Below, in pieces: positions 3,805 to 64,000 of a stretch of 64,000 nucleotides of DNA. Both the position numbers and the translations under genes were made by a program. Source of the DNA: Monocercomonoides exilis PA203. Lineage: Eukaryota > Protista > Preaxostyla. Every line of letters begins with the position of its first letter. Positions within the stretch are counted from its first letter, which is position 1. The notes beneath the pieces are model-generated. The model ran no database searches, had not been told where the DNA came from, and saw nothing but the letters and a program-made list of their open reading frames with translations. The stretch is taken from assembly GCA_001643675.2 (NCBI GenBank), contig LSRY02000008.1, positions 1,364,001 through 1,428,000 on the forward strand. The letters are read 5' to 3'.

Positions 3805-5943
3805 GTGCTAGGTATGGGGATGGGGAAGGATGTTGAGGCAGGGGCATTTGATCTGAGTGGGAGCATTGGGGTGTTGACGAACATTACATTGAAGGGGTGG
3901 AGAAGTGGGGGAGAGATCTATTCAGGCAGGCTGTTTGGAGGGAAGGGATATGGAGGGGAGAAGGGTGGAGGTGAAGAAAAAGGAGGAGAAGGAGGAGAAA
4001 TGGGAAGAGGAAGAGGAAGAGAAGGAGAAGGAGAAGGAGAAGGCATTGAAGGGAGTATTTCGGTGAGTGAATCACACTTCTCTTCTTTTTGTGTCTCATC
4101 AGCCCCATTCCTCTCGTCGCCTTCAATACCCCTAATGTCCCTCTCCAAACTCACATTTTTCAACATCTCAACAGCAAATGAGGCATGCTCACCTTCAACA
4201 ACAACGTCATCCCAAACCTCATGTTTTATGAGTAGCTGCTCATTCTCATCAGTTTGTGATGCGTATGATGGAGGAATTGTCACTTCCCTCAACAACCCCT
4301 TTGCCTCTTTGACTGCCTCAAATACCTCGTTTGTTGGATGTTGCAGAACAAGAAATGTTGTTTGCGAAGGAACATCAGACAGAAAGTTGACTCCAGGGAG
4401 GCAGAACGAAACAGAAAATGGAGCAAATTCATTCACTTGGTGTGAATGGAACGGATCGAAGGCTAATGGAAGCAAAGATGATTATGCCGATGAAGCTTCC
4501 AATGGTGGAGCAATTCGAATGTATAACCTCAATTCAGGAGAACTGATAGTTTCGCATTGTTTATTCAATGATTGCTATGCTCATTATGCTGGAGGAGGGG
4601 TCATGTGTTTTGGAATCAGTTCGGTTGAGATTGAGCACAGTTTTTTTAATTCTTGTGAAGGACAAAATCGATATGGAGGAGGAATGTTTGTTTATACGAT
4701 TTCGTCGTGTGTTCGGATCAGTAGATGTGAATTTCTCAATTGTAAATCAAATGAGGCTGGAGGAGGACTTTATCTTAATGATTTCAAGGTTTCAGGAACA
4801 GGATGTATTGGAGAAGAAAATGAAGGAGGGGAAAGTGCGTGTGTGTTTGACTGCAGTTTCACTTCATGTTCAATTACGAACGATTGGGGTGGAGGCATGT
4901 TTTGCAAAAATGTTCCCAATCAATTCAAGATTAGAAGCGTCAGGTTTATTTCGTGTAACGCATCGACCAGGGGAGGCGGATTTCATTTGGAGCCAATAAA
5001 GCAAACTGTACCAGCTGATGGGCTTTATTGCTATTTCCTCTTCTTCCATGAATGCAAATGCTCGGGTGATCCACCACATGGTCACGACATGATATACTTG
5101 GACAATTACAATCACTATTTGAAATCAGGAAATCCGTTCAAAGAATGTTACACCACAAACACAGATGATCAGAGAGTGTGCTATGCATACAATTATGCAA
5201 GTGCAAAAGCTTGGTCATATAACCAAACATCAAAAAAGGTGTGGCTGAACGAATGGTCGAAGGTTCTGTTTGTGGGGGTGAATGGTAAGGACTCGAGTGG
5301 GCTGTGTGGAATGGGCGAGTCAGCACCTTGCAAGACGGTGGGACACGCAGTGGAGACGGGCTTGGAAGAGCTGAGCTCATCAATCACGCTGATGGAAGGG
5401 AATCACACGAGCGAGGCAACAACGATTGATATTGGAGAAAAGAAGATTTCAGTCATTGGGAAAGGCAAAGATAAAAGCTCGATTGGAACAGGAACACTTT
5501 CATCGGTAGGAACGCTATTCAGCGTGTCAACAGGTCATCTTGGTTTATTGCACATGAAGGTTGATTGCAATTCAAATTCAAGTCCTTCGCCGAGCGTGGT
5601 TGTGGTGTCTGATGGGGGTGGGTCACTCTCATTGGAGGATGTTGTGATCACCACGAGTGTTTCTTCAGGAAACTATGTGATGTCGTCGTCAGTGTTTGTG
5701 GTGCCGCTGTCGCAGCTATCGATGGTTGATGTGGAGATAACAGATATGAATGTCTCAAAATCATTGTTCTCTGAGTCGGATCTATCTTCTCCTTCTTCTT
5801 CTTCATTGTCGTCATTGTCGTCATTTTCATTGACTTCGTCTTCTTCATCTTCTTCGTCGACTTCATTGTCTTCATCGCCTCCTCCTGCGCTGTTTTCGAC
5901 TCTTCTTCCTTTTCTTCTCAGAAAGCAGTTTCACCAACGATAG
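3805..5943 (+). CDS. Cys/Gly-rich parallel beta-helix-like putative surface protein, copy 1 (5'-truncated, degenerate Ser-rich 3' end)
   Basis: 712-codon ORF with repeating GGAI/GGG-x-hydrophobic...CxFxxC units, FTWCEW, ESACVFDCSFTSCS, YCYFLFFHECKC and CG...PCKTV. It begins abruptly at the edge of the AT-rich hub, so the true start is uncertain. Fold inferred from repeat periodicity. Confidence 0.75.
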   Translation: MLGMGMGKDVEAGAFDLSGSIGVLTNITLKGWRSGGEIYSGRLFGGKGYGGEKGGGEEKGGEGGEMGRGRGREGEGEGEGIEGSISVSESHFSSFCVSSAPFLSSPSIPLMSLSKLTFFNISTANEACSPSTTTSSQTSCFMSSCSFSSVCDAYDGGIVTSLNNPFASLTASNTSFVGCCRTRNVVCEGTSDRKLTPGRQNETENGANSFTWCEWNGSKANGSKDDYADEASNGGAIRMYNLNSGELIVSHCLFNDCYAHYAGGGVMCFGISSVEIEHSFFNSCEGQNRYGGGMFVYTISSCVRISRCEFLNCKSNEAGGGLYLNDFKVSGTGCIGEENEGGESACVFDCSFTSCSITNDWGGGMFCKNVPNQFKIRSVRFISCNASTRGGGFHLEPIKQTVPADGLYCYFLFFHECKCSGDPPHGHDMIYLDNYNHYLKSGNPFKECYTTNTDDQRVCYAYNYASAKAWSYNQTSKKVWLNEWSKVLFVGVNGKDSSGLCGMGESAPCKTVGHAVETGLEELSSSITLMEGNHTSEATTIDIGEKKISVIGKGKDKSSIGTGTLSSVGTLFSVSTGHLGLLHMKVDCNSNSSPSPSVVVVSDGGGSLSLEDVVITTSVSSGNYVMSSSVFVVPLSQLSMVDVEITDMNVSKSLFSESDLSSPSSSSLSSLSSFSLTSSSSSSSSTSLSSSPPPALFSTLLPFLLRKQFHQR

Positions 5944-6032
5944 TTGGCATTTCTTCGTTTGGTCAAGCACAATAACCCCAAAATAGCAACAATGCTTGGC
6001 AAGATGTTCCAGCAGCACTCGCCTCTCAGAGC

Positions 6033-6106
6033 CATCAAGTCAATCAAGCTCGTCAAGTCCGTCAAGTCCGTCAAGTCCGTCAAGTCCGTCAAGTCTGTCA
6101 AGTCTT
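6033..6106 (+). repeat. 9-bp tandem repeat (GTCAAGTCC)n, about 8 imperfect copies
   Basis: gtcaagtcc repeated directly at 6052-6105 with degenerate leading units. Confidence 0.9.
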
Positions 6107-6629
6107 TCAATAGCGCCAATGAAATCTATTGCCAGCCATTTTCTTTGATTCTGCACACATTGCTATTTCCGGCACACAACTGAAAGTCACAAATGGAAGG
6201 GCATAAAACACAGCGAATGCGAAGGAACTGAAGCAGACACAGCGGAGAAGACAAACAAATTGATTAATGCAAGGATCTAAATGACAGCTACAATGCAAAT
6301 ATAACGAACACAAAGATACGAAAATGAAGATGCAGAATGCCTTGGACAAATTAAAAACGATCTTCAAAGTGGTTGTGCATCGACGTGAAGAGGTTGCAGC
6401 TGCTGTTTTTCTTTTCGCGAAAATCAACAGAATTTTCTGATGGCAAAAACCATGCCAACCGCTCACCAGAACAGCTACCCCATTAATGTCCATTTCTGAA
6501 GGAAAAAAAAGGCCGTTTCAGCATGCAAGCAGCAGACGCATCGCCACGTCATTCCCTTTCACAATTTCCCAACTGACAATTGAAGAGTTCGCGTATCATG
6601 AAGGAATTCCTCGGTAAGAGAAGTCATCT

Positions 6630-7130
6630 GAAGAAGTAAATGAAGAAAAAAAAAGAGATGAAGGCGATGAAGGTGATGAAGGCGATGAAGGCGATGAAGG
6701 CTTGGAGGAAAATGAAGAAGAATATAAGGAAGAAGAAGAAGAAGAAGAAGACAAATATGATTATGACCAAGAAGGGAAAAATTATATAAAATTTTAATTA
6801 TTGGGAGATGCATTTGAAAATAATGACGGAGAAGAATTCGATGAAGAAGATGAAGGAGATGACGAAGAGGAAGAAGATGAAGAAGATGAAGAAGATGAAG
6901 AAGATGAAAAATATGAAGAAGATAATGGCCAAGAAGATAAAGAAGAATATGATAATGGACAAGAAGGATAAAATTTATGTAATTTCATTTGTCAAGGAGG
7001 TGCATATGAAAAAAATGACTTCGAAGATAAAGACGATTAAGGAAATGAAGATGGAGAAGAAGATGATGATGATGACAGCGATGATGGCAATGACAGAGAT
7101 GAAGATGACAAAGATGGTGAATATGATGTT
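6630..7130 (+). repeat. GAA/GAT-rich low-complexity tract, possible decayed acidic-protein exon
   Basis: Runs of GAAGATGAA and GAAGGCGAT. The Asp/Glu reading frame is interrupted by stops. Confidence 0.6.
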
Positions 7131-10089
7131 ATTGTCAAGTTTGAATACTATACATCTTCTGACAGAAGATATTCTCAGCATCACGGCCTCGTTCTCTGCT
7201 CTTGTGAATAACGTTTCAATGATAGAAGGCTGAAGACAAAGGTCAAATGACTCAAATCCATTTTACCTGTAATTTGCCTCCAGCTGCCTGTATTACGCAA
7301 AACTGTCCGTTTTTCTCGTTTTTTCGCCTCTCAAGCCAAGCAATGAAAAGCAGTTCCATCGCTCCCCCCAGCGCATAAAATCAATGTCTTGCCCTTCTCA
7401 TTCCAAGAAAGGCGCCTTGTTCTGTTCTAGCTGCCTCCAATGTCCTGTTTCACTCATCTGCCCCAATCGCCCCAACAAACTTAAAAATGAAAATGTCCTC
7501 TTCCTCTTTTTAAAAACGTTCCCTTTTCATTGAAGTTGGCTGTTCTTCCTTTTGGCCTTGGAAGTCTTTCAACCCCGTTGATTTCTGCATCATTAAATTT
7601 CATTTTTCATCACATTTCTATCCATCGCGCATGTTGAGTCCAAAATAAGTCACATAAATATTTATGATAAAATACATTCAGGCTCTAATAATATATTTGT
7701 AAGATAACATTTGACTCGCTTCATTGCTGTTCTGTTCTGCAAAGAATAAATTGTCCATTTTATATAATTTGTCTGAATCACCACTTTGGAGAGGATACGG
7801 ATGGAAATATCTTCACAACAAATAGAATAATATAAAATACATACATTGAAAATTCTTCATTTCCATCGAAAATATTGTCGCTCCACAGCATTCCAACAAT
7901 CGAAATGAACAATTTCATCTTCCATCGAATAAATATTCTTTTGTAATACCCAACCTATTTACTGGAAATATTTCATTTAGTCAATCTGTCTTTGTTTTCA
8001 CTTCGGAGTCTCACTCCGTTGACAGTTTCTGAGCATTTGGCATTTCTTGATCATTTTCCATAACGAATAAGAGCCACAAAAGAAAAAGAGCACAACTCGA
8101 TGTGTCGTGGCTGAATGGGAATATGAAGACAATGCGATAACAAAAGGATGGACTTGTGGTGTGGGGTGAAGGAGTTGAGTTTTTGGAGGAGACAGGGTTT
8201 TGGAGGGGGAAAGGAACGATAAAAGAATATTTTTTGTGGAAAAGAGGTATTTTTGTGATATTTAAAAGGCAAAATGGATGTGCGGGAGATGGATTTGGAT
8301 GGGATTTTGAGGGGTTGTTTTTTCGATTTTTGTGAGTTGGAAGGAGTGGAGGTCGTGTTTGTTATTTGAGAAAAGGATTTTGATGTTGAGGAGGTGGGGT
8401 GAGAAGGGGCAGAGGTGCGGAAGATGGGTGAAGCGAATGGAATATATTATCTTTGGAGGAGAGGATAAGAGATGGAGAGATATGTGGAGGAGGTGTTTTT
8501 TTATTTTCAAATGCAGAGAAGGAGGAGGCATATGGGGCAGGGCAAGAGGGAGAGCATTTGTGAGTGAGTGTTTGATAAGAAAGAGAAGTGGGGTTGAAGA
8601 AAAAAAAAGTGAGAGATATTTATTTAATATTTTAAATTTTTTATTGAAAGGATAGTTTGGCCGCGCCTCTCATTTGCAGGACAAGTGTTGGAGGCGGAGG
8701 CAGAGGAAGACGGGAAGAAGGAACATCAGCGCTGGCTCTTTGCATTGGAGGTGCGGAGACAGAGGAAGATGAGGAGCTGACTACGAGAGGCGTCTTGCAA
8801 TGGAAAGAGACAGAAAAAGGATGGAGATATTTATTTTTATTTTTGGTTGGAAGAAGGGGAATGGGAGCTGGGGGGACAGGGATTGTGATATTTTGTGGAG
8901 TGATATTGTTGTTGTTTTGAGGGGAAATGGAGAGAAGAAGAAGAAGATTTGGGCAAGGGATGGGAAAGGATTCTTCAGATGGAATCTTCTTCTTTTCCAG
9001 TTCTTTATGGAATAGAGTTTGTGAAGTTATTTAAGTGGAAATAAGACCAAGGATTGGAAGTGAATGATTTTTAGGAGAAGCAGAAGGGAAGCGAAGAAGG
9101 GGCGGATGGGCTTTGTTGGCAGAAAGGAACGATATTTTGGGGAAAAAAAAGGAAATGAAGAAGAAAGGATGAATTAGAAAAAGTGTGTGAAGAAAATTCA
9201 TTATAAAATAATTTGTTGTTATTTGTTTTGTTTTGTTTTTTAAAAATATCTTTCACATTTTTTTTTACAAATTTGTATATTTTTTATATTAAATTTCATG
9301 ATATTTTTTATTTTATATATTTTTATTCGGAATATTCAGTGAATTTCCGAAAGATGCGCAGAAAGCCATCACATGTTGTCTGAGGAGCGCAGATTGTTTT
9401 TTTAGCTTTGCTTGAAGAATGAGAGGAGGAAGAGAAATATTTCATATTTTTTGGATTGAGGGTTGGATGGAGGAAGATGAGAAGAGAAGAATGGTGAGAG
9501 TGAGGTTGGATGGGCAATGGAAGAGCGGGCGAAAACAACATTTAATTTTTTCTTTATTTTTGGAATTAGATTTGAAAGGCGAAGGCGTGGTGTGTGTGGT
9601 GCTTGGAGTGGATGATGTTGGGGTGAGAGGCATTTGGAGAGAGGCAAACAGGGGACGAGGGGAGTGAAGGGAAATGAAGATTTGTGGAGGTATTTTGTTC
9701 TTGTTTGTTCATATTCTTCATGTTCCATTTTTTATTTGTATTTGTATTTGTATTTTTTGATTTGATTGATGTGTGATGCGATCAGGTGTTGTCAAAAGCG
9801 CTGGGGGAGCATGAAACATGGGATGTGGAAACACTGCTTTTTTTATGAGCATTCCTGGAAGAAATTGGGAGAAATCAGCAACCGAAGAGTGTTTGGCAGA
9901 ATGAGCGAGACGGAAAAAACTGAAGAGAATGAGGAAAGAAATTTTTGTGGAATTTTTATTTACAAAAATCTTTTCGGAAGCAGCAGCAGAAGAGGCAGAA
10001 AAGAGGAACTCAAGCTCAATGGGATATTTTTTGGCATGGCGCTAAGAGGCATGGGGAAGGGGGAGAAGGAAAAGGAAGAAATTCTGTGA

Positions 10090-11523
10090 ATGAATTTCAT
10101 TTCTCTTCTTTTTGCCAATTTTTTATCGCCGCCCTCTACACCCCTTAAATCCCTCTCCAGACTCACTTTTTTCAACATCTCAACAGCAAATGATGCATGT
10201 TCACCTTCAACAACAACATCAACCCAAACCTCTTGTTTTATGAATGGTTGCTCATTCTCATCAGTTAGCGACGCATATGATGGCGGAATTGTTCATTCCC
10301 TCAACAATCCTTTGGCTTCCTTATCTGTTTCAAACACCTCGTTTATTGGGTGTTGTCGAACAAGGAATGTTGAATGCATTGGAACTGAAACTAATAGGCT
10401 GGCTCCAGGGAGACAGAACATTACAGTGAATGGAGCAAACTCATTCACTTGGTGCGAGTGGAGTGAATCGAAGACGACTGGAAGCAAAGATGATTATGCC
10501 AATGAAGCTTCCAATGGTGGAGCAATTCGGATGTATAACCTCAATTCAGGAGAACTGACAGTTTCGCATTGTTCATTCAATGATTGCTATGCATATTATG
10601 GCGGAGGCGGAATCATGTGCCGTTCAATCAAGTCAGTTGATATAACAAACAATTTATTCAACGCTTGCAATGCTCAAAACAATGCTGGAGGGGGATTGTA
10701 TGTTGTATTAATTTCATCATGTGTTCGGATCAGCGGATGTGAGTTTCAGAAATGTTCTTCTTATGGCTGGGGAGGAGGACTTTATCTTGATAATTTTCAG
10801 GTTTCAGGAACAGATTGCATTGGAACAGAAAATGGAGAAGGGGAAAGTGCGTGTGTGTTTGACTGCAGTTTCACTTCATGCTCAGTCACAAATTCGCAAG
10901 GTGGGGGCATGCGTTGTGCTACTGTTCCTGCAACGCAATTCAAAATGAGGAGCATTCAGTTTTTTTCATGTTCTGCACGGCAAGAAGGTGGAGGATTGTG
11001 TTTACATCCAAATCGAGCAACAGCACCGAATGATAAATTTTATTGTTATTTTTTGTTTTTCACGAATGCAAATGCTCTGCAGCCACTCCATATGGGCATG
11101 ATATGATATATTACGATAATAACAATTTATATTTATCTCAAAATAACCCGTTCCATGAATGTTACACAACAAACACAGATGACCAAAGAGTATGTTATGG
11201 ATATGATTTATCGAATTCAGGGAGTTGGAAATTTCAGCACACAGAAAAAAAAGGATTGGCTGAAGGACAAGACGATATATGTTTCAATGAATGGAAATGA
11301 TGCATCTCCACTTTGCGGATCAAATGAATCAAATCCGTGCAAAACGGTGAAGAAGGCGTTTGAGATGTGTGAGGTGCAGATTAGCTTGACAATCACGCTG
11401 CTGGATGGAAATCATCAAAGCGAGACAACAACAATTGAGATTGGGTCAAAGAAGGTTTCAATCATTGGGACGAGCAAAGAGAAGAGCGCGATTGGAACAG
11501 GAGTGCTTTTTTTTAAATCATGA
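10090..11523 (+). pseudogene. Beta-helix family copy 2 (two compensating homopolymer frameshifts; 3'-truncated at hub)
   Basis: Mirror of 13924-15357. One T fewer at 11056-11060 and one A more at ~11245-11252; these may be sequencing errors. Confidence 0.75.
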
Positions 11524-12156
11524 CTGGATGGTTTAAGATGCGTGAATAAGTATGCCCAACATTTTTCAAAAACAAAAGTGGATTAATATTTTGCATACAA
11601 ATACCAAAAAAATGCATTTAGTCGTAGCTATTGTTTGTAATAGGAAAAAGCTTTTTTACATATATTTTTATAGATTTTTCATCATTTTTTTCATTCTTAT
11701 ATTTATTACAAAAACATTATTAGCAACAGAAAAAAATAAATATATTTTTTCTGTGCAAAATTTGAAAAGAACATCAGGTCGAAAAAATATATTTTTGTGA
11801 TTGCTTATGCAGAATCATTTTTTTTCCTTGTTATTGTGAATAAAATCTTTCATTCATGTGAGTTATTATCTGTGGAAACTCCAGTGTATGAACTTAAAGA
11901 TACTGTTTGCCAAAACGAAATCCATATTCCGTTGAAAAGCTGAATCTTCCTTTTCGGATTATTTTTACACACATACATATTAACAAGTGTGTATACATAT
12001 GGACAATTCTTTTTGAATTCATGATAATTTTTAATCTTTTTTTTTCTTTTCTTTTTCTTTTTTTCAATAAAAATATTTCTTTTTTTGAAAACACTTCAGA
12101 AGCATTAACCAATCTTTGTGAAGAATTGTCATTAGCAAAACTTATCAATGTATATT

Positions 12157-12402
12157 GGGTGATAATTTTTGATGTCATGCCTTTACTGTAAAAAATTTCG
12201 GTTTTAATATATATCTTGAATGGTGATAAATGAACACTGAAAATTGATAATACCTTTTCAAGATAATTATGTCATGAACTTATCTCAAATAATGGCTTTT
12301 GCAACAATTATTTTATGTTCGAAATTTGATAAAAAACTTTTTGTTATTGGCAAAAAAACATTTTTTCAAATCAACACTCCGAAAAAAGTTATGATTTCAA
12401 AA
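12157..12402 (+). repeat. Conserved hub module with inverted ends; homologues at 835-1362, 37212-37460 and ~54320-54755, plus their mirror copies
   Basis: Same order in all four hubs: GGGTGATTATTTTTGA ... TGAACAC(T/A)(G/A)AAA ... TCAACACTCCGAAAAAAGTTATGATTTCAAAA. The middle TCGGTTT(G/T)A element is seen in P2, P3 and P4. Confidence 0.75.
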
Positions 12403-13923
12403 CAAAAAAGTCGCACAATATAACTTTTCAATAACGTTTCAGATGTGTAATGAAAATCAGATTTGATAAAACTTCTTTCGAATTTGAATTGGACTTGATT
12501 CAAATGGTATTTTTTCAGAAATTATCTTTGGAAACAAATGTTTGTCATTATGATTTCATTTTTTTCATTCAAATCATAATTGTTCAGCAATCATGGAATA
12601 TGTCAAATATGTCTTGATTTCTCAAAAATTCTATCATTATTTATCAAATATGTAATGTTTGTTTTATTATCAATTATTAAACAATCACATTCGTTTGTCA
12701 TATTTCAATTTCAGATCTCAGAGTTTCATAGAAAAGGAAATGAATCATTAATGATGTTTGTTTATGTTCAAACAGGAAAAAGATACTATTATAAAATTTC
12801 TGTTGAATAATGACAGAATTTTTGAGAAATCAAGACATATTTGACATATTCCATGATTGCTGAACAATTATGATTTGAATGAAAAAAATGAAATCATAAT
12901 GACAAACATTTGTTTCCAAAGATAATTTCTGAAAAAATACCATTTGAATCAAGTCCAATTCAAATTCGAAAGAAGTTTTATCAAATCTGATTTTCATTAC
13001 ACATCTGAAACGTTATTGAAAAGTTATATTGTGCGACTTTTTTGTTTTGAAATCATAACTTTTTTCGGAGTGTTGATTTGAAAAAATGTTTTTTTGCCAA
13101 TAACAAAAAGTTTTTTATCAAATTTCGAACATAAAATAATTGTTGCAAAAGCCATTATTTGAGATAAGTTCATGACATAATTATCTTGAAAAGGTATTAT
13201 CAATTTTCAGTGTTCATTTATCACCATTCAAGATATATATTAAAACCGAAATTTTTTACAGTAAAGGCATGACATCAAAAATTATCACCCAATATACATT
13301 GATAAGTTTTGCTAATGACAATTCTTCACAAAGATTGGTTAATGCTTCTGAAGTGTTTTCAAAAAAAGAAATATTTTTATTGAAAAAAAGAAAAAGAAAA
13401 GAAAAAAAAAGATTAAAAATTATCATGAATTCAAAAAGAATTGTCCATATGTATACACACTTGTTAATATGTATGTGTGTAAAAATAATCCGAAAAGGAA
13501 GATTCAGCTTTTCAACGGAATATGGATTTCGTTTTGGCAAACAGTATCTTTAAGTTCATACACTGGAGTTTCCACAGATAATAACTCACATGAATGAAAG
13601 ATTTTATTCACAATAACAAGGAAAAAAAATGATTCTGCATAAGCAATCACAAAAATATATTTTTTCGACCTGATGTTCTTTTCAAATTTTGCACAGAAAA
13701 AATATATTTATTTTTTTCTGTTGCTAATAATGTTTTTGTAATAAATATAAGAATGAAAAAAATGATGAAAAATCTATAAAAATATATGTAAAAAAGCTTT
13801 TTCCTATTACAAACAATAGCTACGACTAAATGCATTTTTTTGGTATTTGTATGCAAAATATTAATCCACTTTTGTTTTTGAAAAATGTTGGGCATACTTA
13901 TTCACGCATCTTAAACCATCCAG

Positions 13924-15357
13924 TCATGATTTAAAAAAAAGCACTCCTGTTCCAATCGCGCTCTTCTCTTTGCTCGTCCCAATGATTGAAACCTTCTTTG
14001 ACCCAATCTCAATTGTTGTTGTCTCGCTTTGATGATTTCCATCCAGCAGCGTGATTGTCAAGCTAATCTGCACCTCACACATCTCAAACGCCTTCTTCAC
14101 CGTTTTGCACGGATTTGATTCATTTGATCCGCAAAGTGGAGATGCATCATTTCCATTCATTGAAACATATATCGTCTTGTCCTTCAGCCAATCCTTTTTT
14201 TCTGTGTGCTGAAATTTCCAACTCCCTGAATTCGATAAATCATATCCATAACATACTCTTTGGTCATCTGTGTTTGTTGTGTAACATTCATGGAACGGGT
14301 TATTTTGAGATAAATATAAATTGTTATTATCGTAATATATCATATCATGCCCATATGGAGTGGCTGCAGAGCATTTGCATTCGTGAAAAAACAAAAAATA
14401 ACAATAAAATTTATCATTCGGTGCTGTTGCTCGATTTGGATGTAAACACAATCCTCCACCTTCTTGCCGTGCAGAACATGAAAAAAACTGAATGCTCCTC
14501 ATTTTGAATTGCGTTGCAGGAACAGTAGCACAACGCATGCCCCCACCTTGCGAATTTGTGACTGAGCATGAAGTGAAACTGCAGTCAAACACACACGCAC
14601 TTTCCCCTTCTCCATTTTCTGTTCCAATGCAATCTGTTCCTGAAACCTGAAAATTATCAAGATAAAGTCCTCCTCCCCAGCCATAAGAAGAACATTTCTG
14701 AAACTCACATCCGCTGATCCGAACACATGATGAAATTAATACAACATACAATCCCCCTCCAGCATTGTTTTGAGCATTGCAAGCGTTGAATAAATTGTTT
14801 GTTATATCAACTGACTTGATTGAACGGCACATGATTCCGCCTCCGCCATAATATGCATAGCAATCATTGAATGAACAATGCGAAACTGTCAGTTCTCCTG
14901 AATTGAGGTTATACATCCGAATTGCTCCACCATTGGAAGCTTCATTGGCATAATCATCTTTGCTTCCAGTCGTCTTCGATTCACTCCACTCGCACCAAGT
15001 GAATGAGTTTGCTCCATTCACTGTAATGTTCTGTCTCCCTGGAGCCAGCCTATTAGTTTCAGTTCCAATGCATTCAACATTCCTTGTTCGACAACACCCA
15101 ATAAACGAGGTGTTTGAAACAGATAAGGAAGCCAAAGGATTGTTGAGGGAATGAACAATTCCGCCATCATACACATCACAGACCGATGAAAATGAGCAAC
15201 TGCTCATAAAACTTGATGTTTGGGTTGATGTAGTTGTTGAAGACGAACATGCATCATTTGCTGTTGAGATGTTGAAAAAAGTGAGTCTGGAGAGGGATTT
15301 AAGGGGTGTAGAGGGCGGCGATAAAAAATTGGCAAAAAGAAGAGAAATGAAATTCAT
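13924..15357 (-). CDS. Beta-helix family copy 3 (477-aa open cassette, truncated after IGTG at the hub)
   Basis: Continuous ORF with all family motifs. Homology to longer copies stops at ...AIGTGVLFFKS, where the AT-rich hub begins. Confidence 0.75.
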   Translation of the reverse strand: MNFISLLFANFLSPPSTPLKSLSRLTFFNISTANDACSSSTTTSTQTSSFMSSCSFSSVCDVYDGGIVHSLNNPLASLSVSNTSFIGCCRTRNVECIGTETNRLAPGRQNITVNGANSFTWCEWSESKTTGSKDDYANEASNGGAIRMYNLNSGELTVSHCSFNDCYAYYGGGGIMCRSIKSVDITNNLFNACNAQNNAGGGLYVVLISSCVRISGCEFQKCSSYGWGGGLYLDNFQVSGTDCIGTENGEGESACVFDCSFTSCSVTNSQGGGMRCATVPATQFKMRSIQFFSCSARQEGGGLCLHPNRATAPNDKFYCYFLFFHECKCSAATPYGHDMIYYDNNNLYLSQNNPFHECYTTNTDDQRVCYGYDLSNSGSWKFQHTEKKDWLKDKTIYVSMNGNDASPLCGSNESNPCKTVKKAFEMCEVQISLTITLLDGNHQSETTTIEIGSKKVSIIGTSKEKSAIGTGVLFFKS

Positions 15358-18475: not shown

Positions 18476-18507
<32 letters not shown>

Positions 18508-47540: not shown

Positions 47541-47572
<32 letters not shown>

Positions 47573-54600: not shown

Positions 54601-55364
54601 ATTCTAACATTCTCATGCAAAATAAAATATTTAAATATTAAAAAGTTGAGGAAAATCTTTGAAAAGATTGTGTGGAACAAAATTCATAAAGCAAAAAATT
54701 TCGTCCCATATTCAACACACCGAAAAAAGTTATGATTTGAAAAATAATCATCCATATATATTCAAACAATATTTTAATGAAAATTAATAATAATAAAAAA
54801 AAAGGAAAAAAAAAAGTCACTAATATAATTCTGACATTATCTTCCAGAAGGCAAAAAATAGAAAAAATATCACCAGAAAAACATATTGTCGTGATGTGTA
54901 ACATCAACTCATTGAAGGAGATTGCAATAGATTTACACAGAATCATGATCTTAATAATCGCTTTTATGAGAACAAGCTCAGGATATAGCACATAGTACAG
55001 AACTTAGCCCACGCCTTTTAAAGAAGCAAATAGTTAATCACCGTTTATCAAATTAATATCACCTTGAGTCAAATGAATCATGGAAAATACAATCAGTCTT
55101 ACCAAAAACATATATTTTAGAAGTTGAAATCAAAATTATCAGCAAGCAGATCCGCTGGCTGTTTAATAAATAAATTCAGATAAAATAACAATGGCTCGTA
55201 ATACAGAGCTCTCCTTTCTCGCTCTCCTCCTTTCCAAAGGAAAAAAATATTCTATTTGCTATTTGTAATAAAGTTAGCTTATTTTTTCCTGTTGATGTAC
55301 CTCCCTTTCACACAGCCTTATTCCAATAAAAATCATTCGCCTCTTAAATGCTTGTGCTGCTATC

Positions 55365-56962
55365 TTATAAATTCTCAAATGATTTATACCAAAAATATAT
55401 CAACACACCAATCATTCCACTTACCCCGGCTATCGTACTGAATAAAGTAAATGGCGTTGTCTCTCCTGCTGCTGCTGCTGCTGAAGAAGAAGAAGAAGAA
55501 GAAGAAGAAGAAGAAGAAGAAGAAGAAGAAGAAGAAGAAGAAAGTGCTCCTGTTCCTATCGAACTCTTCGTCCTTCCCTTCCCAATGACTGAAATCTTCT
55601 TTGCCCCAATATCAATTGTTGTTGTCTCGCTTCGATGATCCCCTTCCATAAGCGTGACTGACAAGCTTATCTGTATCTCACACATCTCAAACGCCTTCTT
55701 CACTGTCAGACAAGGATTTGATTCATTTGACCCGCACAGCTCATATTCATCATTTCCATTCGCTGAGACATATATCGTCTTGTCCTTCAGCCAATCCTTT
55801 TCGATATTTGATCATACACCCAACTCCCTGAACTCGAATAATTATACACATAGCATACTCTCTTGTCATCTGTGTTTGTGGTGTAACATTCATAGAACGG
55901 ATTTCCTGTGCTCAAAAAAACATTGTAATAATCATAATACATCACATCATGCCCATATGGATTGGAGGTTGTTCTGCATTTGCATTCATGAAAGAAAAGG
56001 AAAAAACAATAAACTCTATCATCTGGTGCATTTTGTCTATCTGGATTAAAATGAAACCCTCCTCCATATCCCATTGCAGAACATGAGATAAATTGAACGC
56101 TCCTCATCTTGAATTGGGGAACTATATTATAACAACACATGCCCCCACCACTATTACCGGTAAGTGAACATGAAGTGAAACAGCAGTCAAACGCACACGC
56201 ACTTTCGCCTCCTTCGTTCTCATCTCCAATACATCCTGATCCGGTCACTTGAATATTTTCTAATCTTAAGCCTCCTCCACCATTATTTGCTTTACAATTC
56301 TGGAATTCACATCCGCTGATCCGAACACACGACGAAATGGAATGAATAAACATTCCACCCCCACGATAATTTTGCGCAGTACATGAGTCGAAAGTGTTAT
56401 TTACAATCTCAACAGATTTTATGTTATAGCACATGACTCCTCCACCATTATAATAGGCTGTGCAGTCATCTAATGAACAATGCGAAACAGACATAGAGGC
56501 AGATGGTTGACTGTACATGCAGATGGCCCCTCCACTTGACACTCCATCAGTCCACGAATCGCTTTCTCCTGTTGTTTTCGACCCATCCCATTCACACCAA
56601 GTGAATGAGTTTGCTCCATTCACTGTAATGTTCTGTCTCCCTGGAGCCAGCCTATTAGTTTTAGTTCCTTCACATACAACATTCCTTGTCCGATAACACT
56701 CGATGAATGATGTGTTTGAGGCTATCAAAGAGGCATAGGGGTTGTTGAGGGAATGAACAATCCCTCCATCATATACATCGCTAACCGATGAGAATGAGCA
56801 ACTACTCATCAGGCATGTGATTTGGGTTGACGTTGTTGTTGGGGATGGACAATCTGTAGATGCCGTTGAGATGTTGAAAAATGTCAGATGATAGAGGGAT
56901 GCAAAAGGGATGGAAGGTGATGAGAAAAATGGGGAAGAATATGAGAAATGAAATTCGTTCAC
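55365..56962 (-). pseudogene. Beta-helix family copy 11 (mirror of copy 10; A4 vs A5 frameshift at ~55800)
   Basis: ORFs 55787-56962 and 55365-55703 together reproduce copy 10, apart from shorter Ser/Ala runs. Confidence 0.75.
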
Positions 56963-59900
56963 AAAAATTCTTCCTTTTCCTTCTCCTCCTTCCCCATGCC
57001 TCTTAGCGCCATGTCAAAAAATATCCCATTGAGCTTGAGTTCCTCTTTTCTGTCTCTTCTGCTGCTGCTTCCGAAAAGATTTTTGTTAAAAAAATCCCAC
57101 AAAAATTTCTTTCCCCATTCTCTTCAGTTTTTCCATTTCGCTCATTCTGCCAAACACTCTTCAGTTTCCCATTTCTCCCAGTTTCTCCCAAGAATGTCCC
57201 AGAAAAAAAGCAGTGCTTCCACATCCCATATTTCATGCTCCCCCAGTGCTTCTCATAACACCTGATCGCATCACACATTTATGAAATTTAAAAAAATACA
57301 AATACATAAAAATAAAAAATGATATGTGAAAAAAATTAACAAACAAGAATAAAATACCTCCAGATATCTTCATTTCCCTTCACTCCCCTCATCCTCTGTT
57401 TGCCTCTCTCCAAATACCTCTCATCCCAACATCATCCACTCCAAGCACCACACCACACCACGCCTTCGCCTTTCATATCCAATTTCAAAAATAAAGAAAA
57501 AATAATATGTTGTTTTCACCCTCTCTAACATTGCCCATCAACCCCGCTCTCACCATTCTTCTCTTCCCATCTTCCTCCATCCAGCCTTCAATCCAAAAAA
57601 AAAATATAGAATATTTCTCCTCCTCTTCTCATTCTTCAAGTAAGGCTTAAAAAAAAACAGTCTGCGTTCCATCGATATACCTCAGACAACATGTGATGGC
57701 TTTCCATCCATCTTTTGAAATTCACTCAATATCTTCAATAAAAAAAGAAATAAACATAAAATTAAATATAAAAAATATATATATAAATTCTCATGAAACA
57801 AATCATCAAACCTGTCTCCTCCTACGCCCCGAAAGGCTCACAAAGCAATCGCACATTCCCTTTCCTGTGCTGTCTCGACTGCCCAGATGAGTATGACTGC
57901 ATCCCCAAACATCCTGTGCCAACCTCTCTTCCCCATCTCCTTGATTTCCATATCCTCTTCCATTTTCGTATTGTTCTTGATAGCAATCATCGGCGTGTGC
58001 CTTTCAACACATACTCCCCCCTCAATCATTCACAATCATCCCCACCCATCAGCTCCCAAAATATAACATCCAACTCGCTTTTGTCTCCTCCTTTAAAATA
58101 AAAAAATATGTGTGTGTGAAAATCTCAGCTGAGATGTGTTCCTCCACCAAACATGCACTCCACCACACACTCTCCATCCCCTTCCCCTTCCTGCTCCTTC
58201 TCACAAACATTGTTTCCCTCATTCGCCTTTCTTTTCCAAAAAACGAACTGCAGATAAATCATCCCATCAATCATAGCTGCTGCAAGTACCATTGTCTCTT
58301 GTGGGCATCTGCTTCTCTGATCAGCCACAAGCTGAACCCTGCTCCCCACAAACAATCTCGCTTATAAATCAAACACTGCCAAACACATGAAATTCAGAAA
58401 ATGAACAAAATATCCCCAAAACAAGTTTATTTTTTGTTTCCACACACCCCCCTCAACCATGTCCATTTTCACTCAGCCATTGCCGAGATAAAGAAAATAT
58501 GAAAATGATTTGTTGGTTTGAGTCTTTTTTGTAATGGATTCTATGATCATCAGATTCGAAAGAACGGAATAATTTATTCACAGAATGAGAAATCCGTGAG
58601 TGAACATTATCTGTAGAACTAGAAATATTATTTCCTGTGGAGGCAACAAGAAATGGTGGAGATGCAATAATGCTGAAATTCTGACCTTTGATTTTTGGTA
58701 ATCGGATGACCAAGGGGAATATATCAATTTCATCAATAACACAAAAATGATATTGTATGTATTTTTTATTGTTCAATTGATTGTGAAGATATTTCCGTCT
58801 GTATCCTCTCCAAAGTGCAGGAATATGAGTTATTGTTGAAATGGCCAATCCCCGCTTTGTGGAGCAACACGATGAGAACGGAGCAGATTATTATATAGGC
58901 ATTGGGAAATAAATGAAGTTACGCAAGATACATGATTTTTTATTTGGAACAGGAGATGAAAACAAATTCGACTGTTATATTATAAAATGAAGATAACAAG
59001 AAGGAATTCTGTGAAGAACAAAATCTGCACAAAATTATATAGCATTTGGGAGCATAAGGCAATGGAGCAGTTTGGGGTATTTTTTGGCAAGGAAAGTGGA
59101 AGGCAATATCGAGGGAAGGACATTTCTTGCGAATAAAAACTTAGAAAACAATGCAAGCGATGAGAGTGGAGATCAGGGACATCAATGGGAGTAAAACAGC
59201 TGCTGCTGCCGTTGGAAAGATGCATGTGTGTTTTGTGGAATATGCGCAGAGAAGCAAGACTTTCCAAAAATTCGTGCTTAAATGAAAAAGAATAATTTGT
59301 GACAAAAGCATCAGTCTTGGCCTGTGTTCCTGCAAGAATGGCAAGACAAGTGAAGTATCCTGCAGCTGTTACCGTTCTTTAACCTTCTCCGAGCTGCTGC
59401 AAGGACGAGTCTAAAGCTTGGCGTTTCGTTGTCATGGGCAGTTATACAGCAATTTGAGTTGGGAATTATCTTCTGCCCCGTCTCCATCAACGGTATTTCG
59501 ACTTCTGCTGGCAAAGTTCAGTATTTTTTGAGGCTCTGTTCGGCTGCTGATTTAGGGTTGGGCTGTTTTGCTACAGTTGTTGCGGGGGATGGCAACAAAG
59601 CGACTTTGTCATATCTGCTGCCAACTGCAACAGGTGGATCAGCCTTTTTCTTCTTCTTCTTCTTCTTCTTCTTCTTCTTCGTTTTTGTCATTTTTGAAGC
59701 AGACGAGCATTGGCAGCAACGAGGGATGAATTGAGGCAAGCACATGCAATATGCGTGAAGAGAGCCAAGGGATAAAAGGACGGGCATATCCCTGACGTTC
59801 CTGATATTGCCATGACAGAAAATGGGATGTGCGCTTGAAGCGCCGGGGATGAGCGAAGCAGCGCAACGGCTATGGAGCAGCACACAGCACTCAAGGCATG

Positions 59901-60674
59901 CTGTTTTTCCGCGTATTGTGTTGACCGTGCTTGAGGCAGAGGGAATGGCGGGATGAGTGTTCTTTTTGTGTGAGTTACATGATTGAAGAAGGTGAGGAAA
60001 GGAGGGATGGAAGTGCCTTGTTTTATTTGAGAGGAAGGCAGAAGAGGGAGAAGGAAGACATGGATTGAAAGGATCAAGGAAGAGAAGAAGGGTTATGAGA
60101 CCGAGACGAGAGAAACGAGGGAACAAGAGAAGGAGAAGAAGAATGAGGAGAAGAGAAGGGAAGTGAAGAAGCGGAAAATGAAGCGGAAGGTTTCGAGAAG
60201 AAAAAGGTATAAGGATTATATCTCAAAAGTCATATTTTTGATATTTTATTTCAAATTTATTTTCAAATATTCTTTCAATTTTCTTTCTTTTTTTTTCCAT
60301 ATTTAATTTAATATTTCTTCAGTTTATTTTTTATTTTTCAGAATTTTTACTGTTATTTTTTAAATGACAAAAGTGCATTTGCATGAGTCGTCAAGAGCAA
60401 TGGATGTGAATGGAATGTGGAAAAAAGGCAGAAGACGACAATAGAAGAAAAAAAGAGATAATAGGGAAAGCAAATGGCGAAGAAGATTATGTTCTTGTTT
60501 CAATTTGGTGGAACTGAAGGAAAAAGACGCTTTTCTTTTGGGAATGCGCATTTCAGAAGCAGGAGAAGAGGCAGGAAAAGGGAATTCAAGCTCATTTGAA
60601 TCTTGACGAATATCTTACTGAGAGGCATGGTAGGCATATGACAAATGATTGAAGGAAAAGGAAGAGTATTTCAG

Positions 60675-62159
60675 TGAGAGAATCAAGCTCCATTTCTTAC
60701 AACTCCCTCGATGCTCCTTATTTCCTTCTCACAACTCACATTTTTCAACATCTCAACAGCAAATGAGGCATATTCATCTCCAGCAACTACATTTTCCCAA
60801 ACATCATGTTTGATATACAGCTGCTTATTTTCATTAGTGTGTGATGCATATGATGGAGGAATTGTTCCTTCTCTGAACAACCCCTTGGCCTCTCTGACTG
60901 CCTCAAATACCTCATTCGTTGGATGTTGCAGGAAAAGGAATGTTGAATGCAATGGAACTGCAGAGGTACCATTAAAGCCAGTGAGACAAAGCACAACAAC
61001 CAATGGAGCTAATTCATTCATTTGGTGTGAATGGAATGGATCGAAGACGACAGGAACAGAAAATACATGGGAAGACATTGCTTCAAATGGAGGGGCTATT
61101 TGCATGCACAGCCAATCAAATGCTATAATTTCAATTAAGCACTGCTCATTCAATGATTGCAATGCTTATTGTGATGGAGGAGGAGTCATGTGTGCAAAAA
61201 TCAAATCTGTTGAGATTGAAAACAACTCATTCAACTCATGCACAGCTCAAAAAAGTGCTGGAGGAGGGATGTGTATTTATGTGATTTCAACATGTGTTCA
61301 GATCAGCGGATGTGAATTCCAGGATTGTAAAGCAAATGGATATGGAGGAGGACTTTATCTCGACAATTTTCAGGTTTCAGGGCCAGGATGCATTCCAACA
61401 GAAAATGGAGGAGGAGAAAGTGCGTGTGTGTTTGACTGCAGCTTTGCTTCATGCTCAGTGACAAGCACAACTGGTGGAGGAATGCGTTGTTACAATATTC
61501 CTGTTCAAGTTAAGATTAGAAGCATTCAATTTATTTCATGCAATGCATCGTCATATGGAGGAGGGTTGAGTGTGGATCCACGTATTACAACAGCGCCAAA
61601 AGATGGACATTATTGTTATTTTCTTTTTTTTCACGAATGCAAATGTTCGGCCACTTCTCCACGGGGACATGATATTGCATATACAGATTATTACAAACAT
61701 TTTTTGGATTCTGGAAATCCGTTCAACGAGTGCTATACTACAAATGCTGATGATAGAAGAATGTTTTATGAACACTATGATGGTACTAATTGGGTGTATG
61801 ATCAAATATCGAAAAAGGATTGGCTGAAGGACAAGACGATATATGTCTCAGCGAATGGAAATGATGAATATGAGCTGTGCGGGTCAAATGAATCAAATCC
61901 GTGTCTGACAGTGAAGAAGGCGTTTGAGATGTGTGAAATACAGATAAGCTTGTCAGTCACGCTTATGGAAGGGGATCATCGAAGCGAGACAACAACAATT
62001 GATATTGGGGCAAAGAAGATTTCTGCTGTTGGAAAGGAAAAAAAGAAGAATGCGATTGGAAGGAATGCTGTTTTGCCTTTATTCTCTGCTCCGCAGCTTT
62101 TTATTCTCCTCTTCTTTTTTCATCTCCTTCAGACTCGTCTTCTTCGTCTTCTTCATTAA
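60675..62159 (+). CDS. Beta-helix family copy 12 (482-aa ORF from 60711; truncated after KKISAVGK)
   Basis: Continuous ORF with family motifs; both flanks decayed. Confidence 0.75.
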
Positions 62160-62864
62160 TATCTTCAATTTCTGTTTTATTATCTTCAATTATATTGTAG
62201 TCATTGTCTATTTTTAATATTTTGGCTGTTGGAATTATTCGGCCGGAAGCCACGCTGAGGAAAGGAAATGAGCAAAATTTGGAAGCAGAAGAGGGTCAAT
62301 TTCATTGGTCGTGAGATGGAAAGCGGAGATGGAGAAGAAGGGTTTTGAGATTGAAATTGGAGGGATGAGGGAATACTGGTCGGAGGAGAAGAAACGACGA
62401 GGAAGAAAAAGTGTGTGAAGAAAACTCAAAATAAAAAGGTTTGCTGAATGATTTGTTTTGTTTTTCTTGTACAAAATTAATTCTTTGATGTTTCTGTAAT
62501 ATTTTTTCATACTTTTCTTTGAGTGATTTTATATCATTTATTTTTTATAATTATTTTATGACAATAAGAATTTTTTGGATGAGTATTCAAAAGCGAAGAA
62601 TGCGAATGGAATATGGAAAGAAGGCAGAAGATGGTTACAGTTGAAAAAGTGATTTTGGAAAAACAAATGATGAAGAATGTTGGAATGCTGCTTCCGTTCA
62701 GAAGCATTGAAGAAAAAAGATGCTTTTCTGCTTTTAATGGGAGCCAATTGTCTTCAGCAGAAGAGGCGAGGAAAGAATCTGAATTTAGGAAATATTCTGC
62801 TACATGGCGCGGAGATGCAAAACAGGTGTATGGTCAAAAAATCAAAAGAGAAGGAAGAATTTCA

Positions 62865-64000
62865 GTGAGTGAATCGCGTTTCTCATCTTCTTCCCCATTT
62901 TTCTTTTCACCATCTATATCCCTTATATCTCTCTTTCATTTGGTATTTTTCAACATCTCAACAGCAAATGAGGCATGCTCACCTTCTACCACTATGTCAA
63001 CACAAACCTCATGTTTTATGAGTAGTTGCTCCTTTTCATCAGTCTGCAATGCATATGATGGCGGAATTGTTCCCTCACTCAACAATCCCTATGCCTCTTT
63101 GACTGCCTCAAACACCTCGTTTGTTGGATGCTTCCGGACAAGGAATGTTGTTTGCGAAGGAACTTCAGATGTCAAGTTGACTCCAGAGAGGCAAAGCATT
63201 ACAGAAAATATAGCGAATACGTTCACTTGGTGCGAATGGAACGGGTCGAAAACAACAGGAGATGTTGACGATCATACTGATCGTACTTCAAATGGCGGAG
63301 CAATCAACATGAACAATTTGGCATCTGCCTCAATTTCTATTCAACACTGCACGTTCAACAACTGTTATGCGCATTATGGAGGTGGGGGAGTAATATGCCG
63401 GCAAATCAAAACACTCATTGCTGAAGACAATACATTCAATGATTGTACAGCTCAAAGTTATTATGGAGGAGGATTGTATGTTTATTATATAACTTCGTGT
63501 GTTCGGATCAGCGGATGTGAATTCCAGGGTTGCAAAGCAAGTATTCAAGGAGGAGGACTTTTTCTCGAAAATTTTCAGGTTTCAGGGCCAGGATGCATTC
63601 CAACAGAAAATGGAGGAGGAGAAAGTGCGTGTGTGTTTGACTGCAGCTTTGCTTCATGCTCAGTGACAAGCACAACTGGTGGAGGAATGCGTTGTTACAA
63701 TGTTCCTAATCAATTTAAAATGAGGAGCATTCAGTTCATTTCATGTTCAGCAACTGCATATGGAGGAGGATTGAGCTTCAGACCAGAAAAATCAGAAAAG
63801 CCAGATGATGGGTTCTATTGTTATTTCCTGTTCTTCCACGAATGCAAATGCAGAGATGAATCTAATCCATATGGTCACGATGCGTATTATGTTGATTATT
63901 ACAATGTTTTTTTGAGCACAGGAAATCCGTTCTATGAATGTTACACAACAAACACAGATGACCAGAGGATGTGTTATGTGTATAATTATTCGAGTTCAGG
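62865..64000 (+). CDS. Beta-helix family copy 13 (partial, runs off the window end; absent from the ORF track)
   Basis: Manual reading from GTGAGTGAATCGCGT gives VSESRFSSSSPFFFSPSISLISLFHLVFFNISTANEAC, later FTWCEWNGSKTTG, ESACVFDCSF and YCYFLFFHECKC. Confidence 0.8.
   Translation, partial: MSESRFSSSSPFFFSPSISLISLFHLVFFNISTANEACSPSTTMSTQTSCFMSSCSFSSVCNAYDGGIVPSLNNPYASLTASNTSFVGCFRTRNVVCEGTSDVKLTPERQSITENIANTFTWCEWNGSKTTGDVDDHTDRTSNGGAINMNNLASASISIQHCTFNNCYAHYGGGGVICRQIKTLIAEDNTFNDCTAQSYYGGGLYVYYITSCVRISGCEFQGCKASIQGGGLFLENFQVSGPGCIPTENGGGESACVFDCSFASCSVTSTTGGGMRCYNVPNQFKMRSIQFISCSATAYGGGLSFRPEKSEKPDDGFYCYFLFFHECKCRDESNPYGHDAYYVDYYNVFLSTGNPFYECYTTNTDDQRMCYVYNYSSS

What the first reader, a model, noticed from the sequence alone, without database searches (positions are those of the whole stretch)
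4468..64000. Paralogs are patchworks of short near-identical segments (segmental gene conversion)
Seen: otherwise divergent copies share sharply bounded blocks, with different partners. 4468-4580 matches 10480-10592 (copies 1/2, about 4 mismatches). 10388-10454 is identical to 50336-50402 (2/10). ~11158-11208 matches ~33493-33544 (2/6). 51175-51407 matches 61791-62023 (10/12, 2 mismatches). 61365-61496 is identical to 63570-63701 (12/13, 132 bp). 51064-51116 matches 63894-63946 (10/13). ~5500-5790 is close to ~33840-34130 (1/6). No single tree fits these partnerships. Inference: combinatorial shuffling of 50-250 bp tracts, about 1-3 beta-helix rungs, that preserves the reading frame.
Basis: partly seen in the sequence, partly recalled or inferred. 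Interest (0 to 1): 0.82.

Follow-up and report, generated by a model that had tools for sequence, protein, structure and literature searches.

The report
Patchwork receptor-head genes from gene conversion
In the protist Monocercomonoides exilis, neighbouring copies of a truncated surface-receptor "head" gene are true patchworks. Stretches of 35-345 bases have been copied between otherwise 70%-identical copies, which is the familiar gene-conversion way that large surface-gene families evolve.

Summary
All seven tract pairs exist; two needed coordinate shifts of 1-7 bp. The "13 copies" are 8 distinct paralogs, because every copy sits in one of six near-perfect palindromes. The copies are about 70% identical in all pairs, yet they share pair-specific identical tracts. 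A GENECONV-type test gives 33 significant fragments among 15 local copies (median 52 bp, range 35-345). Tracts have no synonymous differences where 5-41 are expected, while third-party copies diverge normally in the same codons. Five alignment blocks each reject all other blocks' trees.

Palindrome twins act as before/after controls. The arms differ almost only in dense patches, and in two coding patches one arm's allele equals another paralog exactly. That means a short internal copy with both flanks kept.

Tracts are also shared with full-length genes of about 2,900 aa on other contigs, so the process is family-wide. These genes have a beta-helix ectodomain, a membrane span and a kinase-like tail. 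Full-length genes show the same tract density outside the part that the truncated copies share, so a dedicated cassette archive is not supported. Tract ends are not enriched in invariant blocks.

This is a known kind of process in a new organism and family. The scan already found it elsewhere in this genome (s1-466207, s1-471035, s1-468335). No reads could be checked.

The parts
3805..5943 (+). Paralog c1, a truncated receptor-head copy. Its palindrome twin lies upstream of the window at about -2422..-719.
   Evidence: ORF list; copy map; palindrome P0
10090..11523 (+). Paralog c2, arm A of palindrome P1. It is split by 1-bp homopolymer indels at 11055 and 11245.
13924..15357 (-). Paralog c3, the twin of c2, with an intact 477-aa ORF.
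   Evidence: P0016 matches at 100%
27207..28897 (+). Paralog c4. Its twin c9 is at 43795-45486 (-).
30147..31423 (+). Paralog c5. Its twin c8 is at 41269-42546 (-).
32576..34572 (+). Paralog c6. Its twin c7 is at 38119-40116 (-), with an intact 665-aa ORF.
   Evidence: P0017 matches c7 at 100% over 589 aa
50035..51636 (+). Paralog c10. Its twin c11 is at 55365-56962 (-). It ends in a Ser/Ala run plus a hydrophobic tail.
60711..62159 (+). Paralog c12. Its twin c12' lies beyond the window at 75161-76468.
62667..64000 (+). Paralog c13, which runs off the window end to 64340. Its twin is at about 73176-74515.
   Evidence: P0022
61365..61496 (+). 132-bp tract in c12, identical to c13 63570-63701. 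The core 61411-61471 differs from the twin c12' at 16 sites.
63570..63701 (+). Partner of the 132-bp tract, in c13. Both c13 arms carry this allele.
51174..51407 (+). 234-bp tract in c10, matching c12 61790-62023 with 2 mismatches. It is present in all four arms.
61790..62023 (+). Partner of the 234-bp tract, in c12.
10388..10454 (+). 67-bp tract in c2, identical to c10 50336-50402.
51063..51116 (+). 54-bp tract in c10, identical to c13 63893-63946.
11314..11373 (+). 60-bp tract in c2, identical to c6 33649-33708. Further c2-c6 tracts are 11157-11208 = 33493-33544 and 10833-10893 = 33169-33229.
4468..4580 (+). 113-bp tract in c1 matching c2 10480-10592 (4 mismatches). Other copies are about 57% identical there.
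10093..10426 (+). About 335-bp tract in c2, identical to copy c0 upstream of the window (-12878..-12545). The identity continues upstream to about 9787.
10203..10275 (+). Patch where palindrome twins differ: c2 vs c3 15172-15244, 17 substitutions in 73 bp. The c2 allele equals c0. The c3 allele is unique in the genome.
5500..5790 (+). Older or longer shared segment, c1 vs c6 at about 33847-34137. Identity is 91%, against 70% in the rest of the gene.
9276..16162 (.). Palindrome P1 (arms 97.3% identical). All substitutions lie in 5 patches and none are isolated.
26570..46123 (.). Palindrome P2 (19.5 kb, 99.73% identical), carrying c4-c6 and c7-c9.
48151..58844 (.). Palindrome P3, carrying c10 and c11.
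58518..64000 (.). Left arm of palindrome P4. It continues to 67697; the right arm is 69495-78670, beyond the window.
1..8467 (.). Part of palindrome P0 (-5062..1624 | 1778..8467), carrying c1.

Best explanation
The window is a cluster of truncated 5' copies of the giant beta-helix receptor-kinase-like family of Monocercomonoides exilis. These "receptor heads" are about 425-710 aa long. The copies stand in short tandem runs, and each run has been duplicated in mirror image, giving a chain of palindromes.

The copies diverged long ago: about 70% nucleotide identity and synonymous difference of about 0.5 per site. They keep exchanging short stretches by non-reciprocal homologous copying, that is, interlocus gene conversion during recombinational repair. 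Each event overwrites 35-345 bp of a recipient with the in-register sequence of a donor and leaves both flanks untouched. The same exchange links these copies with full-length family members on other contigs.

**Shown**
- Significant pair-specific tracts.
- Synonymous-site identity within tracts.
- Tree conflict along the gene.
- Internal patches between palindrome twins.
- Sharing of tracts across contigs.

**Inferred**
- The repair mechanism.
- The direction of single events.
- Any benefit of the process.
For: **Genome and family**
- The genome is M. exilis: all 155 protein hits are MONOS_ proteins. The assembly size and contig number match PMC8767320.
- Eight distinct copies are star-like, 66-73% identical in all pairs.

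**Tracts are real and not selective conservation**
- Permutation test: observed runs of 33-69 polymorphic sites against a permutation maximum of 27-28.
- 33 Bonferroni-significant fragments occur among 15 local copies.
- Tracts have 0 synonymous differences against 5-41 expected. Third-party pS in the same codons is 0.30-0.77.
- Each 288-column block rejects all other blocks' ML trees (AU p<0.01, mostly <1e-5). Supported sister pairs switch between blocks.

**Palindrome arms as controls**
- Only 8 of about 404 arm-vs-arm substitutions are isolated; the rest lie in patches.
- The c12 allele equals c13 and c13' over 132 bp, while the twin c12' differs at 16 sites.
- The c2 allele equals c0, while the twin c3 differs at 17 sites.

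**Scope across the genome**
- The 132-bp and 234-bp tracts have no other match above 88% in the 82-Mb genome.
- 22 significant tracts link local copies to loci elsewhere, including full-length genes on other contigs.

**Independent support and repair background**
- Proteins under GiardiaDB-style EukProt names match c7, c14, c16, cm3 and c17 at 100%.
- M. exilis lacks NHEJ and has a complete homologous-recombination set (PMC6759080).
Against: - No sequencing reads could be examined, and the assembly is ONT-based with known residual errors in multi-copy regions.
- Polarity is unresolved. Three patch alleles have no exact donor in the assembly. Copy c0 matches different P1 arms at different patches.
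- Some boundary chimeras, such as the c0 5' part at the outer edge of palindrome Pm1, may come from the palindrome-forming event rather than from classic short-tract conversion.
- The Sawyer-type test counts multi-copy shared segments as several pairwise tracts.
Confidence: 0.85

Rival explanations
1. Assembly or polishing artefact. Canu read correction, Nanopolish or ten rounds of Pilon wrote one paralog's sequence into another, or collapsed repeats into chimeric consensus.
For: - The assembly is ONT + Nanopolish + Pilon, and its authors report poorer polishing of multi-copy regions.
- Palindrome arms differ by many 1-bp homopolymer indels that look like uncorrected errors.
Against: - Partners are only about 70% identical outside the tracts, so reads should not cross-map.
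- The donor sequence is itself present in the assembly, so its reads have a better home.
- The errors actually seen are homopolymer indels, not substitution patches.
- Each twin carries its own allele, and one of them is unique in the genome.
- Five mosaic copies are reproduced at 100% by proteins that I take to derive from the earlier 454 assembly. This covers both partners of the c14-c16, c14-c17 and c6/7-c16 tracts.
Confidence: 0.04
2. The identical blocks are conserved by purifying selection on the protein or on the DNA, not by copying.
For: - The family has conserved motifs. For example, the block at alignment columns 883-943 is shared by many copies.
- Overall dN/dS is 0.29.
Against: - The significant tracts are pair-specific.
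- Other copies are 53-80% identical there and show normal synonymous divergence in the same codons.
- Partners change along the gene.
Confidence: 0.01
3. Part of the mosaic comes from a different recombination route. These would be chimeric junctions made when fold-back or break-induced replication that built the palindromes re-entered a paralog, or from crossovers, rather than from short-tract conversion.
For: - The longest tract, c0-c2 (about 335 bp in the coding alignment and about 640 bp with the upstream part), lies at the outer edge of palindrome Pm1.
- The outer end of P4 is shared with P3.
Against: - Most tracts are internal, 35-150 bp, and flanked on both sides by the recipient's own sequence. 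These include the patches between twins.
- Tracts shared with other contigs cannot be palindrome junctions.
Confidence: 0.1

Closest known systems
Interlocus (ectopic) gene conversion in large surface-gene families, such as Plasmodium var genes, trypanosome VSG mosaics and Giardia VSPs (from my own knowledge)
   Same: - Old, diverged paralogs share short identical tracts with changing partners.
- Trees conflict along the gene.
- Exchange occurs between clusters and chromosomes.
- The products are predicted extracellular repeat proteins.
   Different: - The host is a commensal oxymonad.
- The protein is a parallel beta-helix receptor-kinase-like ectodomain.
- No expression-site logic, switching or immune pressure is known.
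- Many participants are truncated copies inside palindromes.
Palindromes of the human Y chromosome, whose arms are kept alike by arm-to-arm conversion (from my own knowledge)
   Same: - Multi-kb gene-bearing palindromes with 97-99.9% identical arms.
- Almost no isolated substitutions between arms.
   Different: - Here the arms also receive patches from non-allelic paralogs, which become the main source of arm differences.
- Arm homogenisation itself was not tested here.
Entamoeba histolytica transmembrane kinases, a large receptor-kinase-like family with variable repeat ectodomains (from my own knowledge)
   Same: A protist-specific expansion of single-pass receptor-like kinases with a repeat-rich ectodomain.
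   Different: - The ectodomain type differs: CXXC-rich there, beta-helix here.
- No sequence relationship was tested.

Membership tests
Short-tract interlocus gene conversion | Pair-specific identical fragments longer than chance, given the pair's divergence | tested here: met
   - Permutation global P<0.0005 for 8 or more fragments.
- 33 Bonferroni-significant fragments among 15 copies.
- 63 among 37 copies.
Short-tract interlocus gene conversion | Synonymous sites are also identical inside tracts, while other copies diverge normally there | tested here: met
   0 observed against 5-41 expected synonymous differences. Third-party pS is 0.30-0.77 in the same codons.
Short-tract interlocus gene conversion | Phylogenetic incongruence along the alignment | tested here: met
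   Each of five blocks rejects the other blocks' trees and the concatenated tree by AU test.
Short-tract interlocus gene conversion | Patch with both recipient flanks retained (not a crossover) | tested here: met
   c12 vs its twin c12' differ by 16 substitutions confined to 61 bp. c2 vs c3 differ by 17 substitutions in 73 bp. The arms are identical on both sides.
Short-tract interlocus gene conversion | Non-reciprocity and known polarity (donor unchanged) | tested here: inconclusive
   - c13 and c13' both keep the shared allele, and c12' has a unique one. This favours c13 to c12.
- The donor-less alleles and the c0 pattern leave polarity open.
Short-tract interlocus gene conversion | Junctions present in raw reads | not testable with these tools
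   No reads are available. The only indirect support comes from 100% protein matches under GiardiaDB-style names.
Programmed cassette diversification (silent archive feeding expressed genes, as in VSG, vlsE, pilS) | Exchange concentrated in the region covered by the silent cassettes, and directed from cassettes to expressed genes | tested here: not met
   - Among 13 full- or mid-length genes, tract density is 0.148 per pair per kb in the cassette-homologous part and 0.215 in the next 1.45 kb that the cassettes lack.
- Direction is unknown.
Right-handed parallel beta-helix fold | Three-stranded rungs stacked into a helix; structural match to solved beta-helices | tested here: met
   - AF2 model of c7: residues about 45-335 at pLDDT 85-97, three strands per 28 residues.
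- VIA-align Z 17-19, 220-260 residues at 3-4.5 A to tailspikes, AlgG and pectate lyases.
- Foldseek alone was weak, best E 1.5e-3.
M. exilis tyrosine-kinase-like receptor family | Membrane span plus C-terminal kinase-like domain | tested here: not met
   - Full-length relatives have both: PF07714 partial match at 2767-2866 and a hydrophobic span.
- The window copies stop after 425-712 aa and have no Pfam hit.
- They are head-only relatives, not kinases.

The most novel reading that the evidence does not exclude
The palindromic arrays of truncated receptor heads might be a maintained archive. On this reading, its short tracts are fed into the roughly 300 full-length beta-helix receptor-kinase genes to vary their outer tips. 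That would be a somatic or germline receptor-diversification system in a commensal protist that lacks end-joining repair.
Probability: 0.08. Interest if true: 0.8.

Novelty: new member of a known kind. Interest (0 to 1): 0.4.

Why it matters
- It shows, with internal before/after controls, that the largest gene family of the first known mitochondrion-less eukaryote evolves by frequent short-tract copying between paralogs, within and between chromosomes.
- This gives a route to receptor diversity in an organism that relies on homologous recombination for break repair.
- Trees and orthology calls for this family cannot be trusted gene-wide.
- Several frameshifts in these copies are probably consensus errors in the published assembly.
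- The palindrome twins offer a natural way to count conversion events against point mutations.

Tried and rejected
- I fetched five 10-kb flanks instead.
- **Faulty filter, conclusion withdrawn.** A BLAST filter on whole-HSP identity wrongly suggested that exchange is only local. An exact-match scan and a 37-copy test overturned that.
- **Inflated threshold.** A global permutation threshold was inflated by the near-identical c0/c0b pair. I replaced it with per-pair analytic P values with Bonferroni correction.
- **Tract ends.** The test of whether tract ends lie in invariant blocks was null: 0.717 against 0.713, P=0.37.
- **Distance.** Distance dependence within 114 kb was not significant (P=0.10). 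The only signal is a roughly 2.6-fold higher tract rate per pair locally than with remote loci.
- **Pfam.** No hit for the window copies.
- **Foldseek.** No hit at E<=0.001. VIA-align did give matches.
- **IQ-TREE.** The first runs failed on the thread setting.
- **Literature.** Full-text searches found no paper on palindromes or on gene conversion in Monocercomonoides.
- **Purifying selection.** Considered and rejected as the cause.
Full report
**What the window is**

The window is contig 80, 1,364,001-1,428,000, of an 82.3-Mb, 101-contig genome. All 155 strong protein hits to one of its paralogs are "uncharacterized protein MONOS_..." of Monocercomonoides exilis. Size and contig number match the published ONT assembly of strain PA203. 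That assembly was built with Canu 1.8, Nanopolish and ten rounds of Pilon with 2x300 MiSeq reads (PMC8767320).

Coding parts are about 40% G+C and spacers about 23%. A DIRS-like retroelement with reverse transcriptase and RNase H lies at about 20.4-26.6 kb.

**What the paralogs are**

- The repeated gene has no Pfam hit of its own.
- Whole-genome search finds over 2,300 candidate matches, many inside open frames of about 3,000 aa.
- Two full-length relatives that I fetched are about 2,900 aa. Their N-terminal 600-700 residues match the window copies. After that come further beta-helix repeats (PF13229), one hydrophobic span and a partial PK_Tyr_Ser-Thr domain.
- Karnkowska et al. call tyrosine-kinase-like proteins the largest family of this genome, with 332 members. 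They also report that end-joining repair is missing while homologous recombination is complete (PMC6759080).
- The window copies stop after 425-712 aa, so they are head-only versions.
- An AlphaFold model of copy c7, built with 74 homologues, is confident for residues about 45-335 (pLDDT 85-97). It has three short strands per 28 residues.
- The model aligns to solved right-handed parallel beta-helices at Z 17-19, over 220-260 residues at 3-4.5 A. Foldseek alone was weak.
- The GGG motif recurs every 28-29 residues, so one rung is about 84 bp.

**Copy number needs correcting**

Self-comparison shows that the region is tiled by near-perfect palindromes:
- Pm1: -12880..-5754
- P0: -5062..8467
- P1: 9276..16162
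- P2: 26570..46123
- P3: 48151..58844
- P4: 58518..78670

With the 50 kb of flanks that I fetched there are 15 distinct copies in 114 kb.

**The observation**

All five exact claims hold to the base. The two approximate ones hold after shifts of 1 and 7 bp.

The eight distinct copies are star-like, 66-73% identical in every pair. The shared tracts, in contrast, are 52-234 bp with 0-2 mismatches.

**Statistics**

- A GENECONV-type test permutes polymorphic columns. It gives a maximum chance run of 27-28 concordant sites, against observed runs of 63 (c12-c13), 69+25+35 (c10-c12), 40/26/21 (c2-c6), 36 (c2-c10) and 33 (c10-c13).
- With 15 copies and Bonferroni correction there are 33 significant fragments, median 52 bp and range 35-345. 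They form a web of partners: c13 has seven and c16 seven.
- Overall dN/dS is 0.29 with pS 0.52.
- Inside the top 16 tracts, 15 show no synonymous difference and one shows a single difference, where 5-41 are expected. Third-party pairs have pS 0.30-0.77 in the same codons. Selection therefore cannot explain the blocks.
- Five 288-column blocks each reject the ML trees of all other blocks and of the whole alignment (AU p<0.01, mostly far lower).
- Well-supported sister pairs change from block to block. Examples are c0+c2 and c0b+c6; then c1+c2; then c12+c13; then c4+c14 and c2+c16; then c13+c17 and c10+c12.

**Palindrome twins as before/after controls**

- Across about 38 kb of arm pairs, only 8 of about 404 substitutions are isolated. 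The rest lie in dense patches.
- The isolated differences are mostly 1-bp changes in A or T runs, the usual residual ONT error.
- These indels explain why one twin is often frameshifted, at 11055, 11245, 27591, 31155, 33464 and 51196.

Two patches lie in coding sequence:
- c12 differs from its twin c12' at 16 sites within 61411-61471. There it equals c13, and c13's own twin, over 132 bp.
- c2 differs from c3 at 17 sites within 10203-10275. There it equals copy c0, 23 kb upstream.

In both cases the arms are identical on either side of the patch. These are therefore internal non-crossover patches made after the palindrome existed.

The other alleles (c12', c3) occur nowhere else in the genome; the next best match is 92%. 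The simplest reading is c13 to c12.

For P1 the direction stays open. Copy c0 carries the c3 allele at a second patch (9817-9848) and the c2 allele at 10203-10275. It may therefore preserve the ancestral P1 state.

**Scope**

- The 132-bp and 234-bp tracts have no other match above 88% in the genome.
- I first concluded that exchange is local, but that rested on a faulty filter.
- An exact-match scan and a 37-copy test show 22 significant tracts between local copies and loci elsewhere. These include full-length genes on other contigs: c17-L021 147 bp, c15-L014 108 bp, c0-L029 93 bp and c10-L015 79 bp.
- Rates per pair are 0.173 local-local, 0.067 local-remote and 0.10 remote-remote.
- Among 13 full- or mid-length genes, tract density is as high in the 1.45 kb that the truncated copies lack (0.215 per pair per kb) as in the shared head (0.148).
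- Conversion is thus a property of the whole family. The truncated copies are participants, not a demonstrated archive.

**Artefact check**

I could not see reads. Five points argue against an artefact:
- Partners are too diverged outside the tracts to cross-map.
- The donor is present in the assembly.
- The errors actually seen are homopolymer indels, not substitution patches.
- Each twin has its own allele.
- Proteins listed under GiardiaDB-style EukProt names match c7, c14, c16, cm3 and c17 at 100% over 417-589 aa.

On the last point, I infer that these proteins come from the earlier 454 assembly, because PMC8767320 says GiardiaDB held that assembly. The matches cover both partners of three significant tracts.

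**Other tests**

- Tract ends are not enriched in family-invariant blocks.
- Distance within the 114 kb has no significant effect.
- Frame preservation needs no special explanation, because copying is in register.

**Comparison with known systems, and novelty**

The pattern is the classic one of interlocus gene conversion in large surface-gene families, combined with Y-chromosome-like palindromes. Those comparisons rest on my own knowledge.

I found no paper on gene conversion or palindromes in Monocercomonoides.

Other follow-ups in this scan reached the same reading on other parts of this genome: s1-466207, s1-471035 and s1-468335. The finding is real and well supported, but it is a new member of a known kind.

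Noticed in passing
window 20381-26574: A DIRS-like retroelement lies between palindromes P1 and P2. It has RT and RNase H domains on ORF 22578-25202 (-) and a long overlapping ORF at 21871-25497.
   Followed up: no
window 11055, 11245, 27591, 31155, 33464, 51196: One-base homopolymer length differences between palindrome twins break the reading frame in one arm only. They are probably uncorrected ONT consensus errors rather than real pseudogenisation.
   Followed up: partly
window 15172-15244; 9817-9848; L032:1713-1773: Three patch alleles in palindrome arms have no source above 92% anywhere in the assembly. The donors may be missing, overwritten or on an unassembled haplotype, or these alleles may be the ancestral states.
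   Followed up: partly
window 51500-51636 (end of c10): The short form c10 ends in a long Ser/Ala run followed by a hydrophobic helix-like segment and a short tail. It may be a membrane-anchored head-only protein.
   Followed up: no
window 51063-51407 and homologous columns 1142-1527 of the copy alignment: 18 of the 30 distinct local tracts fall in the 3' third of the shared core, beyond the confidently folded beta-helix. Whether this is a hot zone or a detection bias was not tested.
   Followed up: no
window 58518-58844: The outer end of P4's left arm is also the outer end of P3's right arm (100% identical to 48200-48477, inverted). The two palindromes therefore overlap by about 330 bp.
   Followed up: no
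window 8000-10000 and 3805-4100: The strongly G-skewed stretch upstream of the paralogs corresponds to a Gly/Glu/Arg-rich N-terminal extension that is in frame in full-length genes and in c1. In c2 it is interrupted by a stop.
   Followed up: no
L003-L030 (other contigs and other parts of contig 80): Short-form copies elsewhere also come as inverted pairs, for example L004/L005, L007/L008, L009/L010, L011/L012 and L018/L019, each over 96% identical.
   Followed up: partly
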